From: Macrostomum lignano
Lineage: Eukaryota
Assembly (NCBI GenBank): GCA_002269645.1
Contig: NIVC01001532.1
Location: 62,001 to 126,000 of the forward strand
DNA: 64,000 nucleotides
Direction of reading: 5' to 3'
The notes under the pieces are model-generated. The model searched no databases, was not told the DNA's origin, and saw only the letters and a program-made list of their open reading frames with translations. Each line of letters begins with the position of its first letter. Position 1 is the first letter of the stretch. Of this stretch, positions 2,090 through 40,940 are shown one piece after another. A program made the position numbers and the translations under genes.

Positions 2090-6360
<4,271 letters not shown>

Positions 6361-8400: not shown

Positions 8401-8464
8401 TGCTGCTGAACAGCAATTGGGAACATGGACTTAAGGCTATTGCATTGTATTTGTGATGCAATGG

Positions 8465-10365
8465 CTCACAATCTCACCTGTAGCCTAATCTTATGTCTGT
8501 GCTCATAATCTCACCAGTAGTTGAATCTCATGTCTGTGCTCACAATCTCACCTGTAGTTGAATCTCATGTCTGTGCTCATAATCTCACCTGTAGTTTAAT
8601 CTCATGTCTGTGCTCACAATCTCACCTGTAGTTTAATCTCATGTCTGTGCTCATAATCTCATCTGTAGCTTAATCTCATGTCTGTGCTCACAATCTCATC
8701 TGTAGCTTAATGTCATGTCTGTGTTTACAATCCCACCTGTAGCTTAATCTCATGTCTGTGTTTACAATCTCACCTGTAGTTTAATATCATGTCTGTGTTT
8801 ACAATCCCACCTGTAGCTTAATCTCATGTCTGTGCTCACAATCTCACCTGTAGCTTAATCTCATGTCTGTGCTCATAATCTCACCTGTAGTTGAATCTCA
8901 TGTCTGTGCTCACAATCTCACCTGTAGTTTAATCTCATGTCTAATGCCTAATCTCATGCCTAATCTCATGTCTGTGCTCATAATCTCACCTGTAGTTTAA
9001 TCTCATGTCTAATGCCTAATCTCATGCCTAATCTCATGTCTGTGCTCACAATCTCACCTGTAGTTTAATCTCATGTCTAATGCCTAATCTCATGCCTAAT
9101 CTCATGTCTGTGCTCATAATCTCACCTGTAGCCTAATCTCATGTCTGTGCTCACAATCTCACCTGTAGCCTAATCTCATGTCTGTGCTCATAATCTCACC
9201 TGTAGCCTAATCTCATGTCTATGCTCACAATCTCACCTGTAGCCTAATCTGATGTCTGTGCTCACAATCTCACCTGTAGTTTAATATCATGTCTGTGCTC
9301 ATAATCTCACCTGTAGTTGAATCTCATGTCTGTGCTCACAATCTCACCTGTAGTTTAATCTCATGTCTAATGCCTAATCTCATGCCTAATCTCATGTCTG
9401 TGCTCACAATCTCACCTGTAGTTTAATATCATGTCTGTGCTCACAATCTCACCTGTAGCCTAATCTGATGTCTGTGCTCACAATCTCACCTGTAGTTTAA
9501 TATCATGTCTGTGCTCACAATCTCACCTGTAGCCTAATCTCATGTCTGTGCTCATAATCTCACCTGTAGCCTAATCTCATGTCTGTGCTCATAATCTCAC
9601 CTGTAGTTTAACCTCATGTCTGTGCTCACAATTTCACCTGTAGCTTAATCTCATGTCTGTGCTCATAATCTCATCTGTAGCTTAATCTCATGTCTGTGCT
9701 CACAATCTCATCTGTAGCTTAATGTCATGTCTGTGTTTACAATCCCACCTGTAGCTTAATCTCATGTCTGTGTTTACAATCTCACCTGTAGTTTAATATC
9801 ATGTCTGTGTTTACAATCCCACCTGTAGCTTAGTCTCATGACTGTGCGTACAATCTCATCTGTAGCTTAATGTCATGTCTGTGTTTACAATCCCACCTGT
9901 AGCTTAATCTCATGTCTGTGTTTACAATCTAACCTGTAGCTTAGTCTCATGACTGTGCTTACAAACTCACCTGTAGCTTAGTCTCATGTCTGTGCTTACA
10001 ATCTCATATGTAGGCTAATCTCATCTCTATATACTCACAATCTCATATGTAGGCTAATCTCATCTCTATATACTCACAATCTCATATGTAGGCTAATCTC
10101 ATCTCTATATACTCACAATCTCATATGTAGGCTAATCTTATCTCTATATACTCACAATCTCATATGTAGGCTAATCTCATCTCTATATACTCACAATCTC
10201 ATATGTAGGCTAATCTCATCTCTATATACTCACAATCTCATATGTATGCTAATCTCATCTCTATATACTCACAATCTCATATGTAGGCTAATCTCATCTC
10301 TATATACTCACAATCTCATATGTAGGCTAATCTCATCTCTATATACTCACTATTTCACCTATAGC
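8465..10365. repeat. 37-bp minisatellite (CTCATGTCTGTGCTCACAATCTCACCTGTAGTTTAAT) switching to a 39-bp variant at ~10010
   Basis: ~50 units. Confidence 0.95.
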
Positions 10366-15073: not shown

Positions 15074-15144
<71 letters not shown>

Positions 15145-15217
15145 TGCAGACAGACAGACATGCAGACAGACAGACAGACAGACAGACAGACACACACAGA
15201 CAGACAGACAGACAGAC

Positions 15218-15248
<31 letters not shown>

Positions 15249-15301
15249 TGCAGACAGACAGACAGACAGACACAGACAGACAGACAGACAGACAGACATG
15301 C

Positions 15302-15400
<99 letters not shown>

Positions 15401-15405
15401 CACAC

Positions 15406-15456
<51 letters not shown>

Positions 15457-17894
15457 CACACACAGACAGACAGACAGACAGACAGACAGCCCCCCGCCCC
15501 GCCAACCTTATAATTAGTGGCCATTATCTCGGGAAAGTGGTCAAACTGCCTGGCAACACCGGCAAGGCTGCCCGAGTTGAGAGCGGACACAGCGGACACG
15601 TACAGTGCCACGGACACGGGGGCCATGATTAGCTGATCGGCGGCAACCATCTTCAATACTCGGTGACTTTGATTAGCGAACCTGTGCGACAGGAAATGAT
15701 ACCACTTGTTCAGCATGGGGCCCTGCGATTGGTTTAAAAAAATTTAATTTAAACAGTGATTTAAAAATAATGTGAAGAATTTGCATCAATGAGGCTTTTA
15801 GGTCTAGTATCTAGATCCGGAATCATTATTTTGAACATTATGCGGCTTATGACCTACGGGTCATAGAGCCAGATAAGTCATGAATACAAGGTGGGTGATG
15901 ACCTGTGGGACATAGAAATCAGATAAGTCATAGACACACGGTGGGTCATGACCTGTGGGACATAGAAACCAGACAAGTCATAGACACACGGTGTGTCATG
16001 ACCTGTGGATCATAGAAATCAGAAGATAAGTCATGAACAGTAGGTGGGTCATAGAAATCAGATAAGTCATGAACATTAGATGGGTCATGACCTGTGGGTC
16101 AAAATGTTAATTTATCACTAGACATGAAGTTACTAATGCATTAAAATAAAAAAATTTCTGCTCATTTTTCAACACTGGAACTTACTATACTACTAACAAA
16201 TCTATAAAGCGCGCATGTACCTTCAAAAAGAAGCTTCTGTTGATAAGTCAGGAAAACAACTGTTTACGGAAATGTGCGCCATTAAAAATTATTAAAAGCA
16301 ATTAAAAGTAGGCAATGTTTCCGTTTTATTAATCGGAAATACTTTCTTTTCAGTAAGCATAGCACAGAGAGACCGGTATATCTAAATACGATATGAACAT
16401 TTCATAAATTTTATCTTCTTGCCCTCTGTGTAATTTTTCATACTAACTTGTACAATAAAAGTGATTCTCGGAGTGGTAATTCGGGGCGATTTTGGGGCGG
16501 ACTAGGGGCGATTCTTGGGGTGGATTGGGGACGATTCTTGGGGTGGATTAGGGGTGATTCTTGGGGTGGATTGGGGGCGATTCTTGAGGTGGATTAGCGA
16601 TTCTTGAGGTGGATTGTAGGCGATTCTTCGGGTGGATTAGAGACGATCCTTGGAGTGAATTAGGGGCGATTCTTGGGGTGGATTAGCGGCGATTCTTGGG
16701 CTGGATTAGGGGCGATTCTTGAGGTAGATTAGGGGCGATTCTTGGGGTGGATTAGGAAGGATTCTTTGGACGGATTAGGGGCGATTCTTGGGGTGGATTA
16801 GGGAGGATTCTTTGGACGGATTAGGGGCGATTCTTGGGGTGGATTAGGGAGGATTCTTTGGACGGATTAGGGGCGATTCTTGGGGTGGATTAGGGAGGAT
16901 TCTTTGGACGGATTAGGGGCGATTTTTGGGGTGGATTAGGAAGGATTCTTTGGACGGATTAGGGGCGATTCTGGGGTGGATTAGGAAGGATTCTTTGGAC
17001 GGATTAGGGGCGATTTTTGGGGTGGATTAGGAAGGATTCTTTGGACGGATTAGGGGCGATTCTGGGGTGGATTAGGAAGGATTCTTTGGACGGATTAGGG
17101 GCGATTTTTGGGGTGGATTAGGAAGGATTCTTTGGACGGATTAGGGGCGATTCTGGGGTGGATTAGGAAGGATTCTTTGGACGGATTAGGGGCGATTTTT
17201 GGGGTGGATTAGGAAGGATTCTTTGGACGGATTAGGGGCGATTCTTGGGGTGGATTAGGGAGGATTCTTTGGACGGATTAGGGGCGATTCTTGGGGTGGA
17301 TTAGGGAGGATTCTTTGGACGGATTAGGGGCGATTTTTGGGGTGGATTAGGAAGGATTCTTTGGACGGATTAGGGGCGATTTTTGGGGTGGATTAGGAAG
17401 GATTCTTTGGACGGATTAGGGGCGATTCTTGGGGTGGATTAGGGAGGATTCTTTGGACGGATTAGGGGCGATTTTTGGGGTGGATTAGGAAGGATTCTTT
17501 GGACGGATTAGGGGCGATTTTTGGGGTGGATTAGGAAGGATTCTTTGGACGGATTAGGGGCGATTCTGGGGTGGATTAGGAAGGACTCTTTGGACGGATT
17601 AGGGGCGATTCCTTAAACCGATATATTATCCCATACTGGGTGACAGAACAGATGAAGAACCAATCTTTCAATCTATTGCTAAGCCAAAAGCAAACTCACA
17701 TAAGCGCAGGCACCCAACAAGAAAACCTTGGCTGTTCTGCGAAAACTCATTGTCCGATAGCCGTACCCCTCCAGACTCTGGGCAGCCACATCTCCGACGC
17801 CCATCAGCACTCCGGTTGTCAGGGCGGGCGTAACAACAGGATGCGTCCTTAGCAACCGATCGTAACCAATCCATGCTCGTTTCAACAGTGCCAT
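14707..17894 (-). CDS. MPV17: MPV17/PMP22-family mitochondrial inner membrane protein; exons 17894-17700, 15722-15507, 15026-14974, 14878-14707 (211 aa)
   Basis: YDRLLRTHP..T...T.VLMGVGDVAAQ, GPMLNKWY, KMVAADQLIMAP, NYK|LWPAVQVLNF..P.HLR|LLVVNCVTIVWNTYLSW. GT-AG junctions with matching phases (0,0,2); the CDS is 636 nt. An MPV17L paralog cannot be excluded. Confidence 0.88.
15075..15487. repeat. (CAGA)n microsatellite in MPV17 intron 2
   Basis: Tetranucleotide run with CATG and CACA interruptions. Confidence 0.98.
15850..16100. repeat. ~50-bp minisatellite in MPV17 intron 1
   Basis: GTGGGTCATGACCTGTGG..CATAGAAATCAGATAAGTCAT; period of 50 (15891, 15941). Confidence 0.85.
16475..17612. repeat. 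23-bp G-rich minisatellite that becomes a 46-bp dimeric higher-order repeat (MPV17 intron 1)
   Basis: GGATTAGGGGCGATTCTTGGGGT alternates with GGATTAGGAAGGATTCTTTGGAC from ~16750. Confidence 0.95.
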
Positions 17895-18984: not shown

Positions 18985-19342
18985 ATGGGTTAGAGGCGAT
19001 TCTTGGGCTGGATTGGGGGCGATTCTTGAGGTGGATTGGGGGCGATTCTTGGGCTGAATTGGGGGCGATTCTTGGGCTGGATTAGGGGCGATTCTTGGGC
19101 TGGATTAGGGGCGATTCTTGGGCTGGATTGGGGGCGATTCTTGGGCTGGATTAGGGGCGATTCTTGAGGTGGATTAGGGGCGATTCTTGGGGTGGACTAG
19201 GGGCGATTCTTGGGGTGGATTAGAGACGCTTCTTGGGACGGATTAGGGGTGATTATTGGGGTGGATTAGGGACGCTTCTTGAGACGGATTAGGGGCGATT
19301 CTTAGGGTGGATTAGGGGCGATTCTTGAGGTGGATTAGAAGC
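18985..19342. repeat. 23-bp minisatellite, same family as 16475-17612
   Basis: GGATTAGGGGCGATTCTTGGG units. Confidence 0.93.
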
Positions 19343-19966
19343 GAATTTATCAAAATTAAACATAGGGAATTTAAACAAAACATAAAACTGTTAATTAAGT
19401 GTGCACGGATTAAATTATAGACTTAGAGAAACAGGCAACAGAAAAGGCAAAGCAAGAAAGCAATCGATTCAATGTTTCGGTAGTACAATTGCATAAACCC
19501 ACCAAGTGCGTGAATCTTCAGTTAGAATACATTAGAAATAAAATGAATAAGTATTGCCAGGTTCAAGCAGCCGGAGCTTGCACTTATGTAAGTAGGAGCT
19601 TAAAAAATGGGAATAAAATACATTAAAAAAGAATCAATCAATAAAACATTATACTACTTACGAAACGATACATACTAGTATTTATATAGGTAGTAATCTG
19701 TGCCAAATAAAAATATAAAGAAGCATTATATATAGACTTCTATTACTCCTAACTACAAAGATTGTACAGGCATAGAAGAATGACAGCATTGAGAATTGAA
19801 AATTATTTCATACTATAGATAAAAACAGAACTCAAGAGAAGCGATAGAAATCTGTGTTTTGTTCGATGGCATACATGCGCAACACCCCTCCTCCCCCCAT
19901 TTTACACATTCGACCGGCTTTTTGACCAAAAATGCGACTAACCTAAGAAAGAAGAAACGTAATTTA

Positions 19967-20030
19967 GGGTAAACGGCAGGAGTAACTATGACTGTATTTT
20001 ATAGGCTAAATGCCTCGTCATCTAATTAGT
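19967..20030 (+). other. Isolated 64-bp 28S rDNA-derived fragment (H69-H71 region; R2/I-PpoI target) with the central 14 bp substituted
   Basis: GGGTAAACGGCAGGAGTAACTATGACT (26/27 identical to the recalled conserved 28S sequence), then 14 divergent nt, then AAATGCCTCGTCATCTAATTAGT (23/23). The flanks are not rDNA. Confidence 0.9.
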
Positions 20031-20292
20031 ACTACAGCTAAGTGTTGCGCTTGTATTTATAGTTTTTATAGGCAATTGTTGAAACATTTCGAATTAATAA
20101 AAATTTTTAACAACCCTTAGACCATTGTAAATTGTTTATATTGCAAGAGCGCTGGGAACTCTTTACTCAAAGTTAAAGAAAAAAGTACCAATGCTCGCAG
20201 TTCTGATATTGGATGTTTTGCAATTTTTTGCTTAAAAACATTTTTTTACTGATAAAAAGTGCCATTCTGTCTGTCTGTCTGTCTGTCAATTT

Positions 20293-21553
20293 TCAAGCGC
20301 GCAGAAACGATGTCAGTGATGCAATGGCCAGCCCAGCGCCGGCTACTGTCAGTAGTCTAGTTAGCACACCGCTATCGTTGTTATTATTATTTGGCCCATT
20401 GCCAAGGCCACCAGATTCGCCGTCGTTATAGAAGCGGATCAGGCCAAGCTGCAGGAGAATAAAAAATATTTATACTCATTTTGTTTTACTAAATAAAGTA
20501 ATTTCTGTCAGAGAACCCAAGCTGGTTCCACTCAGAGCGCACCCACATTCATTTAGGGTTTGTTCGGAGGCGATTTCATATCTCCAACACTTCGCATCTC
20601 CGACACTTCATATCTCCGACACTTCATATATCCGACACTTCGCATCTCCGACACATCATATCTCCGACACTTCATATCTCCGACACTTCATATCTCCGAC
20701 ACTTCGCTTCTCCGACACTTCATATCTCCGACACTTTACATCTTCGACACTTCATATCTCCGACACTTCATATCTCCGACACTTCATATCTCCGACACTT
20801 CATATCTCCGACACTTCATATCTCCGACACTTCATATCTCCGACACTTCATATCTCCGACACTTCATATCTCCGACACTTCATATCTCCGACACTTCATA
20901 TCTCCGACAAGCCTAACCCTAACCCTAATTCTAACGGAGATATAAAGTTCCAAGGATATGAAAGACCACTTGTGCACTTCGTGCATCTAAGAAACAATAG
21001 GATTGAAGCCACTCACCCAGCCGCCATTCTGATTGATCCACTGCAGCACTCGCTTATCAACGTACTCCACTGACCAGTCGCAGACTTCAGCAGCCGTCAC
21101 CCCGCTGATCCCCTGGCGTTGGCACTGGCTGAGGAACATAGAGCCGAACACAAAGATAGTAACAACCCGACCCCAATTGCAATTATCAACGAAGACATTG
21201 TCTAGCACTTGTCTGAAACTGTCTCTGGGACAATTGGCGTCGATAACCCAATTGGATCTGAGGTCGTTTAGCTTCTCTCGATATCTCAACTCGTAGTCGC
21301 TTGTGAGGCCAATCACTGCCGAAGACAACTCTTGCATCAGGGGACTGTTGCTGCTTTTGCCGTTTTGCTGCTTCTGCTGGGCATGCCGATAATAACTGCC
21401 GTTTGAGGCTGCTTGGAATCGAACATTGCTGCTGGCACTTTTCTGCAGGTAGACAGTCATTAATTCGCGAAAGATTTCCCGATCTCCATCGTTGGAAGCT
21501 CCTCCATTGCTGCCGCCGCCGCTGCTACTAGAAGAGGAAGTCTGACCAGCCAT
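20293..21553 (-). CDS. Multi-domain Bcl-2-family protein with a C-terminal TM anchor; exons 21553-21017, 20448-20293 (230 aa)
   Basis: BH1 VFVDNCNWGRVVTIFVFG and BH2 WINQNGGW|LGLIRFY, with a phase-0 GT-AG intron right after GGW as in other Bcl-2 genes. Hydrophobic tail LLTVAGAGLAIASLTSFL. Confidence 0.9.
20575..20909. repeat. 16-bp minisatellite (ATATCTCCGACACTTC) in the Bcl-2 intron
   Basis: ~20 copies, followed by CCTAACCCTAACCCTAA. Confidence 0.95.
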
Positions 21554-28854: not shown

Positions 28855-30650
28855 TAGAAGAGCCACCATGTCAAACCTAAAGGAGCCACCATGTCAAACA
28901 TTAAAGAACCACCATGTCAAATATAAAAGAGCCACCATATCGAACATAAAAGAGTTACCATGTCAAGCATAAAAGAGCCACCATGTCAAGCATAAAAGAG
29001 CCACCATGTCGAACATTAAAGAGCCACCATGTCAAACATTAAAGAGCCACCATGTCAAACATATACGTGACTCCATGTCAAGCATAAAAGAGCCACCATG
29101 TCAAACATTAAAGAGCCACCATGTCAAAAATTAAAGAGCCAACATGTCAAACATTAAAGAGCCACCATGTAAAGCATATATGTGACTCCATGCCAAATAT
29201 ATACATGACTCCATGTCTAACACATACGTGACTCCATGTCAAACATCAAAGAGCCATCATGTCAAACAATAAAGAGCCACAATGTAGAACATTAAAGAGC
29301 CACCATGTAGAACATTAAAGAGATACAATGTAGAACATTAAAGAGCCACAATGTAGAACATTAAAGAGCCACAATGTCAAACATTAAAGAGCCAAAATAT
29401 GTAGAACATTAAAGAGCCACAATGTCAAGCATTAAAGAGCCACAATGTAGAACATTAAAGAGCCATGATGTCAAACATTATAAAGCCATCATGTCAAACA
29501 ATAAAGAGCCACAATGTAGAACATTAACAAGCCACCACGTCAAACATTAAAGAGTCATCATGTCAAACAATAAAGAGCCACCATGTCGAAGATTAAAGAG
29601 CCACAATATGTAGAACATAAAAGAGCCACAATGTCAGGCATTAAAGAGCCACCATGTAAAACATTAAAGAGCCACAATGTAGAGCATTAAAGAGCCACCA
29701 TGTAGAACATTAAAGAGCTGCAATGTAGAACATTAAAGAGCCACAATGTAGAACATTAAAAAGCCACCACATCCAACATTAAAGAGTCATCATGTCAAAC
29801 AATAAAGAGCCACCATGTTGAAGATTAAAGAGCCACAATATGTAGAACATTAAAGAGCCACAATGTCAGGCATTAAAGAGCTACCATGTAGAACATTAAA
29901 GAGCCACAATGTAGAGCATTAAAGAGCCACAATTTCGAACAATAAAGAGCCACCATGTCGAACATTAAAGAGCCACCATGTCAAACATTAAAGAGCCATT
30001 ATGTCTAACATATACGTGACTCCATGTCAAACATTAAAGAGCCACCATGTCAAAAATTAAAAGCCACCATGTCAAACATTAAAGAGCCACCATGTCAAAC
30101 ATTAAAGAGCCATTATGTCTAACACATACGTGACTCCATGTCAAACATTAAAGAGCCACCATGTCAAAAATTAAGAGCCACTATGTCAAACATTAAAGAG
30201 CCACCATATCGAACACTAAAGAGCCACCATGTCAAACATATATGTGACTCCATGCCAAATATATACGTGACTCCATGTCAAACATTAAAGAGCCACCCTG
30301 TCGAACGTTAAAGAGCCACAATATGTAGAACATTAAAGAGCCACAATGTAGAACATTATAGAGCCACCATGTCAAACACTAAAGAGCCACCATGTAGAAC
30401 ATTAACGAGCCACGATGTCAAACATAAAAGAGCTACCAAGTTAGACATAGAAGAGCCACCATGTGAAACATATATGTGACTCCATGTCAAACATTAAAGA
30501 GCCACCGTTTCTAACAGTAAGGAGCCACCATGACAGACATAAAACTGGCAAGATGTCAAACATTAAAGAGCCACCATGTAGAACATTAAAGAGTCACCAT
30601 GCCAAACATTAAAAAGCCACGAATTCAAAAATAAAATAGCCACCATTTCA
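28855..30650. repeat. 23-bp minisatellite (ATTAAAGAGCCACCATGTCAAAC), ~75 copies
   Basis: Long degenerate array with a variant unit ATATACGTGACTCCATGTC. Confidence 0.95.
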
Positions 30651-30774
30651 AACACAGGAGAGACATTTTCAAACGTAATAAGAAGTGTCATGCCAATCAT
30701 AAAGGAGCCCCTAGAAAGCTAAGGAAATGTTGCACTATATACTTTTTGTCTGGTGAATGCTTGCTATTTAAGGA

Positions 30775-40625: not shown

Positions 40626-40741
40626 ACTGTCTGTCTGACTGACTCTGAATGTATGTATATCTGTCTGTCTGTCTGTCTGTCTGCCTGTCTGTCGGTATGT
40701 CTGTCTGTCTGTATGTCTGTCTGTCTGTCTGCCTGTCTGAC

Positions 40742-40773
<32 letters not shown>

Positions 40774-40940
40774 GGTATGTCTGTCTGTCTGTATGTCTGT
40801 CTGTCTGTCTGCCTGTCTGACTGTCTGTCTGTCTGTCTGCCTGTCTGACTGTCTGTCTGTCTGTCTGTCTGTCTGACTGTCTGTCTGTCTGTCTGTCTGC
40901 CTGTCTGACTGTCTGTCTGACTGTCTGTCTGCCTGTCTGT
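40626..40940. repeat. (TGTC)n microsatellite just 3' of the KIF3B stop codon
   Basis: Tetranucleotide run with interruptions. Confidence 0.97.

What the first reader, a model, noticed from the sequence alone, without database searches (positions are those of the whole stretch)
19967..20030. 28S rDNA snippet with the R2/homing-endonuclease target core overwritten
Seen: a 27-bp and a 23-bp arm match the conserved 28S H69-H71 sequence almost perfectly (49/50 against my recalled sequence), at exactly native spacing. The intervening CTCTTAAGGTAGCC is replaced by an equal-length GTATTTTATAGGCT (5/14 identity). Established: this core holds the R2 retrotransposon insertion site, the I-PpoI cut site and the TTAA used by Pokey. 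It lies ~260 bp 3' of the Bcl-2 stop, antisense to that transcript. Hypotheses (inference): a repair scar of a rDNA-targeting endonuclease, a cleavage-resistant decoy that binds but is not cut, or an antisense RNA that would clamp the 28S H69-H71 region leaving a 14-nt bubble. A similar string, GTTTTTATAGGC, occurs at ~20052 and could have been the repair template.
Basis: partly seen in the sequence, partly recalled or inferred. Interest (0 to 1): 0.8.

Follow-up and report, generated by a model that had tools for sequence, protein, structure and literature searches.

The report
Scarred 28S rDNA fragment beside Bcl-2
A 64-base stray piece of the large ribosomal RNA gene lies just after a Bcl-2 gene in the flatworm Macrostomum lignano; its middle 14 bases were replaced by sequence that also occurs about 60 bases away, which looks like a scar of error-prone DNA repair and shows no sign of function.

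Summary
Window 19967-20030 (+) is a 64-nt piece of eukaryotic 28S rDNA: 49 of 50 arm bases match and the spacing is native. The central 14 nt (19994-20007) match at only 5 positions, although that core is nearly invariant in 120 eukaryote 28S loci. It is the only rDNA-like piece in the 64 kb window. It ends sharply on both sides and lies 263 nt 3' of the stop of a minus-strand Bcl-2 gene of Macrostomum lignano. It is identical in all three copies of the locus in that assembly.

Thirteen of the 14 replaced bases are covered by two exact tracts that also occur 59-67 nt downstream. Their 3-nt overlap and AT-richness fit the pattern described for templated insertions in polymerase-theta end joining.

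My best reading is a dead, captured rDNA fragment rewritten by one error-prone repair or template-switch event. The patch covers the R2 nick position and the I-PpoI and Pokey sites, so a break made by an rDNA-specific nuclease is possible. I found no R2 record for Macrostomum and could not read the species' own 28S. Nothing supports a decoy or antisense function: no RNA family match, no significant fold, no measurable constraint. Interest is low to moderate.

The parts
19967..19993 (+). Left 28S-like arm, 27 nt, sense orientation on the + strand. It holds the 5' strand and loop of a hairpin of the Rfam LSU model. One mismatch to the majority (A at 19978).
   Evidence: Rfam alignment; column counts over 120 eukaryote 28S loci; blastn 19967-20030.
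19994..20007 (+). Replaced core, 14 nt, 5/14 identical to the near-invariant 28S core. It occupies the place of the R2 nick (equivalent to 20002|20003), the I-PpoI site and the Pokey TTAA. It is AT-rich (10/14).
   Evidence: Target-site positions from PMC13000458 Table 1, PMC2034484 and PMC4260951.
20008..20030 (+). Right 28S-like arm, 23 nt, exact match.
   Evidence: Unique in the window even with 3 mismatches allowed, 0 expected by chance.
20052..20073 (+). Probable local template, or sister copy, of the patch. TGTATTT at 20052-20058 equals 19993-19999. TTTTATAGGC at 20064-20073 equals 19997-20006. The internal 7-nt direct repeat TTTATAG occurs at 20056-62 and 20065-71.
   Evidence: Maximal exact matches. 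TTTTATAGGC occurs only at these two places in 128 kb of both strands, 0.21 expected. Background rate about 1%.
19871..19885 (.). Left arm of a 15-nt inverted repeat (14/15) that brackets the snippet. Its role is unknown.
   Evidence: the repeat finder I1. Only these two copies occur in the window; 2 of 100 shuffles reach 2 matches.
20042..20056 (.). Right arm of the same inverted repeat. It overlaps the start of the template tract.
20293..21553 (-). Neighbouring Bcl-2 family gene. Exon 1 is 21017-21553, the intron 20449-21016 holds a 16-nt minisatellite, and exon 2 is 20293-20448 including the stop. The snippet lies 263 nt 3' of the stop, so it is either in the 3'UTR or intergenic.
   Evidence: ORF and translations. 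Pfam PF00452, E 3.7e-21. 99% identity to M. lignano PAA66788.1, whose sequence spans the exon junction.

Best explanation
The feature is a non-functional stray fragment of 28S rDNA, about 64 nt long. It was captured at some past break or template-switch event in the DNA 3' of a Bcl-2 gene, before the M. lignano locus copies diverged. Its central 14 nt were rewritten in one complex, locally templated mutational event. In that event about 12-14 nt of the 28S core were lost and 13-14 nt were synthesised by copying two short tracts from 59-67 nt downstream. The first tract is GTATTT; after a 3-nt re-annealing on TTT, the second is TATAGGC. The ends were then rejoined. [quoted passage not shown] The equal length of loss and gain would be a coincidence. 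Shown here: the 28S origin, the sharp ends, the clustering of the changes, the local copies of the patch, and presence in three diverged copies of the locus. Inferred: the order of events, the repair pathway, the direction of copying, and the lack of function.
For: 28S identity and native spacing. The changes are clustered far beyond chance (2e-5), so this was one event and not gradual decay. The arms carry only 1 change in 50. The patch is covered over 13 of 14 nt by two exact tracts (7 and 10 nt, 3-nt overlap) from the right flank. The 10-mer occurs nowhere else in the window. A 10-nt or longer copy within 120 nt is seen for 0.85% of unmasked 14-mers and 1.5% of AT-rich ones. Published features of templated insertions match: 3-30 bp, identical to flanking DNA, single tracts rarely above 10 bp, longer ones built in several rounds, AT-enriched (PMC7165422). 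The fragment cannot form its native hairpin, since 2 of 6 stem pairs are broken. It is the only rDNA-like piece in 64 kb of ordinary genes. There is no RNA family match and no significant fold. It is identical in three copies of the locus that differ by about 2% nearby, so it is real and not an assembly error. Stray rDNA fragments are a known genome component (review PMC10946416).
Against: Exactly equal lengths of loss and gain are not predicted by end joining. A looser tiling statistic (two tracts of 6 nt or more) is reached by 5-10% of 14-mers in this repeat-rich window, so the templating evidence is good but not overwhelming. The direction of copying, core to flank or flank to core, cannot be told. 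Base 20007 (T) is not explained by either tract. A complex event in a fragment whose arms show only 2% change is rare under purely random mutation. That favours either a targeted break or a single messy capture event. No empty site or intact-core orthologue was available.
Confidence: 0.62

Rival explanations
1. This refines the main reading. The break that was repaired was made by an rDNA-site-specific nuclease, either an R2-type retroelement endonuclease (possibly with abortive priming) or a homing-type enzyme. The nuclease recognised this ectopic, initially intact copy of its target. Cutting would recur until error-prone repair destroyed the cut site, leaving the flanking arms intact.
For: The patch 19994-20007 covers the R2 first-strand nick position (PMC13000458 Table 1), the I-PpoI site (PMC2034484) and the Pokey TTAA (PMC4260951). 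The 64-mer spans about -36 to +28 around the nick, inside the 60-84 bp duplexes used as R2 target substrates. The arms are nearly unchanged (1/50) while the centre underwent a rare complex event, as expected for a site that is cut repeatedly. R2 elements occur in flatworms, both site-specific and non-specific (PMC5035012; PMC13188248 supplement 16).
Against: A randomly placed 14-nt patch would cover the nick 25% of the time. No R2 is recorded for Macrostomum in the papers searched. A search with a flatworm R2 fragment returned no protein named as M. lignano, although transposon ORFs are often left out of annotations. No reverse transcriptase or endonuclease ORF is in the window. R2 normally nicks and inserts and does not leave small scars.
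Confidence: 0.22
2. One messy event. Arms and patch were laid down together during a single multi-template-switch repair: 28S template, then local flank, then 28S template again. There was never an intact ectopic target.
For: This explains why the arms are almost unmutated while the centre is complex. The patch ends in GC at 20005-20006, which matches the 28S sequence at the same position and could have guided an in-register return. TAATTTAG at the left junction (19960-67) resembles the last bases of the fragment, TAATTAG at 20023-29. This hints at a microhomology-driven capture.
Against: It requires leaving and re-entering a distant rDNA or rRNA template exactly in register. There is no direct evidence for it.
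Confidence: 0.1
3. Functional element. Either a minus-strand Bcl-2 3'UTR segment pairs with 28S rRNA through 27 + 23 nt and leaves a 14-nt bubble, or the DNA or RNA acts as a cleavage-resistant decoy that binds an rDNA-targeting protein.
For: Native spacing of the arms is preserved. The one arm substitution (G to A on the + strand) would still give a G-U pair with 28S in the antisense RNA (inference). The snippet is invariant in three copies. Complementarity between rRNA and 3'UTRs has been discussed in the literature (PMC4911919).
Against: Invariance is not significant; the probability of no variant in 64 nt is about 0.18 at the local density. There is no RNA family match and no fold signal. 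Whether the snippet is transcribed is unknown. The published non-random pattern concerns 18S rRNA and the first 50 nt of 3'UTRs, not 28S at +263 nt. It is a single locus in a single species.
Confidence: 0.04
4. The fragment is a faithful copy of a variant rDNA unit, or part of a dispersed rRNA-derived repeat (of the SINE28 kind, or the tail of an rDNA-associated retroelement that carries 28S-like sequence).
For: Some R2 lineages carry 28S-like sequence in their 3'UTR (PMC5035012). rRNA-derived SINEs exist (PMC10946416).
Against: The core varies by at most 2 nt in 120 eukaryote loci. The local copy of the patch 59-67 nt away would then be a coincidence (p about 0.01). There is no poly(A) tail, no clear target-site duplication and no second copy in 64 kb. 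There is no exact match to the altered junction in the metagenome, prokaryote-genome or viral collections, but these collections are not expected to hold flatworm DNA.
Confidence: 0.02

Closest known systems
Dispersed rDNA fragments / rDNA pseudogene pieces outside the rDNA array
   Same: A short piece of a rRNA gene embedded among ordinary protein-coding genes. It is truncated, unable to form the native structure, and single at its locus.
   Different: It is very short (64 nt) and precisely covers the retroelement and homing-endonuclease hot spot of 28S. Its only large change is a length-preserving replacement of that hot spot.
[quoted passage not shown]
   Same: Loss of a few bases plus gain of 3-30 nt identical to nearby flanking DNA. 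The gain is built from tracts of 10 nt or less joined at a short overlap, in direct orientation, and is AT-rich.
   Different: The enzyme dependence cannot be shown from sequence. The template lies 59-67 nt away. Loss and gain have equal length. One base (20007) is not templated.
R2 retrotransposon target site and its variable 5' junctions (PMC13000458, PMC5035012)
   Same: The fragment spans the R2 target (about -36 to +28 around the first-strand nick), and the altered bases straddle the nick. R2 5' junctions are known to carry deletions of upstream 28S and extra bases.
   Different: No R2 sequence is present: no ORF and no recognisable 3'UTR, only 14 nt. The locus is outside rDNA. R2 is not documented in Macrostomum.
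rRNA-3'UTR complementarity (PMC4911919)
   Same: A stretch 3' of a stop codon that would be complementary to rRNA if transcribed.
   Different: The reported conserved pattern involves 18S rRNA near the mRNA entry channel and the first 50 nt of 3'UTRs. Here the complementarity is 50 nt to 28S, starting 263 nt after the stop.

Membership tests
Dispersed rDNA fragment (rDNA pseudogene piece) | Significant sequence homology to a rRNA gene | tested here: met
   Rfam LSU_rRNA_eukarya local hit. blastn 55/64, E 9e-13 against 120 eukaryote 28S loci.
Dispersed rDNA fragment (rDNA pseudogene piece) | Located outside an rDNA unit, with no adjoining rRNA sequence | tested here: met
   Flanks show chance-level similarity to 28S. 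There are no other rDNA hits in 64 kb. The neighbours are Bcl-2 and Mpv17/PMP22-like genes.
Dispersed rDNA fragment (rDNA pseudogene piece) | Not able to act as rRNA | tested here: met
   It is 64 nt long. 9 of 14 near-invariant core bases are changed, and 2 of 6 pairs of the model hairpin are broken.
TMEJ-type templated insertion scar | Inserted bases identical to flanking DNA, 3-30 nt, in short tracts | tested here: met
   7-nt and 10-nt exact tracts from 20052-58 and 20064-73 cover 13 of 14 nt. Background about 1%. Criteria taken from PMC7165422.
TMEJ-type templated insertion scar | Microhomology at tract junctions | tested here: inconclusive
   1 nt (T at 19993) at the left junction, a 3-nt TTT overlap between the tracts, and GC shared with 28S at 20005-06. 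These are short and could arise by chance.
TMEJ-type templated insertion scar | Dependence on polymerase theta / origin at a double-strand break | not testable with these tools
   This is a historical event, so only the sequence pattern is available.
R2 retrotransposon insertion or remnant | R2 sequence (RT/endonuclease ORF or 3'UTR) between the two 28S halves at the nick site | tested here: not met
   Only 14 nt lie between the arms. There is no RT-like ORF in the window, and the 14 nt have a local source.
R2 retrotransposon insertion or remnant | Host genome carries R2 | tested here: inconclusive
   No Macrostomum record in the papers searched. A search with a flatworm R2 fragment gave no hit named M. 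lignano. The genome itself could not be searched.
snoRNA or other curated antisense guide RNA | Match to a curated RNA family, or box motifs with a short guide | tested here: not met
   No Rfam hit at gathering score in the window. The only weak snoRNA-like hits (E above 7) lie elsewhere, at 19700-19859. Complementary arms of 27 and 23 nt are far longer than snoRNA guides (established knowledge).
rRNA-derived SINE (SINE28 type) | Multicopy dispersed repeat with a tail and target-site duplication | tested here: not met
   Single copy in 64 kb. No A-rich 3' tail and no clear duplication. Genome-wide copy number is not testable here.
Functional rRNA-complementary 3'UTR element (PMC4911919) | Complementarity to 18S rRNA within the first 50 nt of the 3'UTR, conserved across species | tested here: not met
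   Complementarity is to 28S and starts 263 nt after the stop. No cross-species data were obtainable.

The most novel reading that the evidence does not exclude
The fragment is kept by selection. One possibility is a minus-strand Bcl-2 3'UTR element that clamps 28S rRNA on both sides of the H69-H71 junction. The other is a cut-proof decoy that soaks up an rDNA-targeting retroelement protein. In either case the native spacing of the arms would be the selected feature and not a coincidence.
Probability: 0.04. Interest if true: 0.75.

Novelty: new member of a known kind. Interest (0 to 1): 0.22.

Why it matters
Taken as found, it is a small genomic fossil: one more stray rDNA fragment, with a clean example of a locally templated repair patch. 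It would matter more if the break could be tied to an rDNA-specific nuclease. It would then be a natural record of such an enzyme cutting an ectopic copy of its target and of how the germ line repaired it, in a flatworm lineage where these elements are not yet described. If instead the preserved spacing reflected selection (decoy or rRNA clamp), it would be a new kind of regulatory or defensive element. Nothing here supports that.

Tried and rejected
1. Chance match: rejected (E 9e-13; the 23-mer is unique with 0 expected).
2. Assembly artefact: rejected. The snippet is identical in three contigs that differ nearby, and the window is 100% identical to NIVC01001532.1 over 21 kb.
3. Gradual decay of the core: rejected by the clustering of changes.
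4. Inversion, complement or reversal of the native core: checked by eye against the common core, no match. No inverted copy of the patch lies nearby.
5. Longer, degenerate rDNA homology in the flanks: rejected.
6. Structured RNA: fold z-scores are -1.0 (+ strand) and -2.1 (- strand) for 19860-20070, and there is no Rfam family.
7. Exact search for the altered junction in metagenome, prokaryote-genome and viral collections: nothing found. These collections are not expected to hold flatworm DNA.
8. Reading M. lignano's own 28S through the spurious RRT15-like ORF on the rDNA antisense strand: 7692 hits, and the listed 120 were plants and metagenomes with none from M. lignano.
9. Looking for R2 in M. 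lignano with the printed part of a flatworm R2 protein from a paper's supplement: 93 hits, none named M. lignano. The one unnamed NCBI hit came from another genome.
10. R2-occupied half-sites or long ORFs in the 120 metagenome rDNA loci: none.
12. Cross-species orthologues of the Bcl-2 gene: only M. lignano proteins were returned.

Full report
WHAT IS THERE

Window 19967-20030 on the + strand reads as a sense-orientation piece of eukaryotic 28S rDNA. Rfam's LSU_rRNA_eukarya model aligns 19978-20032 to model positions 2255-2310 (20.2 bits, E 0.013). In that alignment both sides match and the middle does not, and two of the six pairs of the model hairpin are marked as broken. No family reaches its gathering score anywhere in the window.

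I fetched 120 eukaryote 28S loci from metagenomes with a pattern that fixes 14 + 23 arm bases and leaves the 14 central bases free.
- One core 14-mer occurs in 108 of the 120 loci, and the other 12 loci differ from it by one or two bases.
- The window's core agrees at 5 of 14 positions.
- Of the 13 arm positions not fixed by the pattern, 12 carry the majority base. The exception is A at 19978, where 119/120 loci have G.
- blastn of the whole window against these rDNA contigs gives a single hit at exactly 19967-20030 (55/64, E 9e-13). This is the only rDNA-like piece in 64 kb.
- Similarity to 28S stops abruptly at both ends.
- Ten differences with nine packed into 14 nt has a probability of about 2e-5 under random placement.

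The one exception is the position of the similar string, which is 20062-20073.

WHERE IT IS

The window is Macrostomum lignano. A 21,252-nt stretch of assembly GCA_002269645.1, contig NIVC01001532.1, is 100% identical to window 10293-31544.

The neighbouring gene on the minus strand is a Bcl-2 family member (Pfam PF00452; 99% identical to PAA66788.1).
- Exon 1: 21017-21553.
- Intron: 20449-21016.
- Exon 2: 20293-20448, with the stop at 20295-20293.

The snippet begins 263 nt 3' of the stop. The next gene on the same strand is Mpv17/PMP22-like and starts about 2.4 kb further on.

No AAUAAA or AUUAAA occurs on the minus strand between the stop and 18858. I therefore cannot say whether the snippet lies inside the 3'UTR. 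The rest of the window holds ordinary cellular genes (PQ-loop, GH31, MRP-L51, kinesin) and many tandem repeats. It holds no reverse transcriptase or transposase ORF.

COPIES

The same assembly holds two further copies of the locus, L001 and L123. They are about 98% identical to the window around the snippet. This fits the recent whole-genome duplication described for this species (PMC5704211, PMC10733133).

The 64-mer is identical in all three copies. Variable sites occur at about 2.7% in this region. No variable site in 64 nt is therefore expected roughly 18% of the time, so the invariance is not evidence of constraint. It does show that the feature is real and older than the split of these copies.

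THE REPLACED CORE HAS A LOCAL SOURCE

The 10-mer TTTTATAGGC occurs only twice in both strands of the window, at 19997-20006 and 20064-20073, with 0.21 expected. The 7-mer TGTATTT at 19993-19999 recurs at 20052-20058. Together the two tracts cover 13 of the 14 replaced bases and overlap by three T.

As a control I used TRF-unmasked 14-mers of this window. Of these, 0.85% (1.5% of AT-rich ones) have an exact copy of 10 nt or more within 120 nt. A looser statistic, two tracts of 6 nt or more, is reached by 5-10%.

The pattern matches what is described for polymerase-theta end joining: insertions of 3-30 bp identical to flanking DNA, single tracts rarely above 10 bp, longer insertions made in several rounds, and enrichment for AT (PMC7165422).

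I therefore read the core as a repair or template-switch patch. About 12-14 nt were lost, and 13-14 nt were copied from 59-67 nt downstream in two rounds. The direction of copying and the pathway are inferences. T at 20007 is not explained.

WHAT CAUSED THE BREAK

The published oligonucleotides for the cleaved R2 target place the first-strand nick inside the core, equivalent to window 20002|20003 (PMC13000458). The I-PpoI site overlaps the core (PMC2034484). Pokey's TTAA is 4 nt from the R2 site (PMC4260951). The 64-mer also lies within the 60-84 bp duplexes used as R2 targets. A nuclease-made break in an ectopic target is thus a fair hypothesis. It would also explain why a rare complex event hit a fragment whose arms are almost unchanged.

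Three points weigh against it.
- A randomly placed patch would cover the nick 25% of the time.
- R2 is recorded in other flatworms but not in Macrostomum in the papers I could search.
- My two attempts to reach M. lignano rDNA or R2 through protein searches failed.

An alternative is that arms and patch were laid down in one messy capture event. The GC shared with 28S at 20005-06, and the TAATT(T)AG repeat at the left junction and at the right end of the fragment, are compatible with microhomology-guided switching.

FUNCTION

Nothing measured supports the decoy or antisense-clamp ideas.
- There is no curated RNA family.
- Fold z-scores are -1.0 and -2.1.
- There is no significant constraint.
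- Transcription status is unknown.
- The published non-random rRNA-3'UTR complementarity concerns 18S and the first 50 nt after the stop (PMC4911919).

The preserved spacing is the one feature these ideas explain and the neutral account does not. I keep them at a few per cent.

VERDICT

The feature is a dead 64-nt 28S fragment carrying a locally templated repair patch over the most heavily targeted site of the rRNA gene. It is a new example of known kinds of thing: stray rDNA fragments and templated-insertion scars. There is an untested possibility, which I put at about one in five, that an rDNA-specific nuclease made the break.

Noticed in passing
window 19871-19885 and 20042-20056: A 15-nt inverted repeat (14/15 complementary) brackets the 28S snippet and is unique in the window. 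Its right arm overlaps the start of the tract that seems to have templated the patch. It could be a fragile hairpin or the ends of a small foldback, but this is not resolved.
   Followed up: partly
window 19960-19967 and 20023-20029: TAATTTAG immediately before the fragment resembles TAATTAG at the fragment's own right end. This may be microhomology used when the 28S piece was captured.
   Followed up: no
window 19998-20004 and 20056-20071, minus strand: The patch and its downstream copies read as TATAAA-type strings on the minus strand (TATA-box-like or weak poly(A)-signal-like). No canonical AAUAAA follows the Bcl-2 stop for about 1.4 kb.
   Followed up: partly
window 2612-2984, 15074-15489, 40660-40940, 20266-20287: The same (TCTG/CAGA)n microsatellite recurs in or next to several genes. 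There is a short run right after the Bcl-2 stop, and runs that keep long ORFs open across the GH31 and Mpv17-like genes.
   Followed up: no
whole window: 27.6% of the window is tandem repeats by TRF. These include a 16-nt minisatellite inside the Bcl-2 intron (20575-20909), 46-nt arrays at 16498-17611 and 28858-30654, a 37-nt array at 8464-10024 and a 23-nt array at 18990-19338. Array lengths differ between the locus copies.
   Followed up: partly
L001, L122, L123 (M. lignano GCA_002269645.1 contigs NIVC01001531.1, NIVC01001532.1, NIVC01003217.1): There are three copies of the Bcl-2/Mpv17-like locus in one assembly. They are 99.4% identical upstream of the gene but only 89-95% identical in the repeat-rich parts. 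This is consistent with the recent whole-genome duplication and/or retained haplotypes.
   Followed up: partly
L124 6001-9941 (GCA_949826985.1, CATKWK010000415.1): An R2-like ORF (zinc fingers plus reverse transcriptase) lies next to a 28S antisense RRT15-type ORF, with a Helitron-like gene pair beside it. The organism is unidentified. The locus was found while looking for R2 in M. lignano.
   Followed up: no
L053 (metagenome rDNA contig, 13,090 nt): Two copies of an ORF of about 720 aa with unknown function lie on an rDNA-bearing contig.
   Followed up: no
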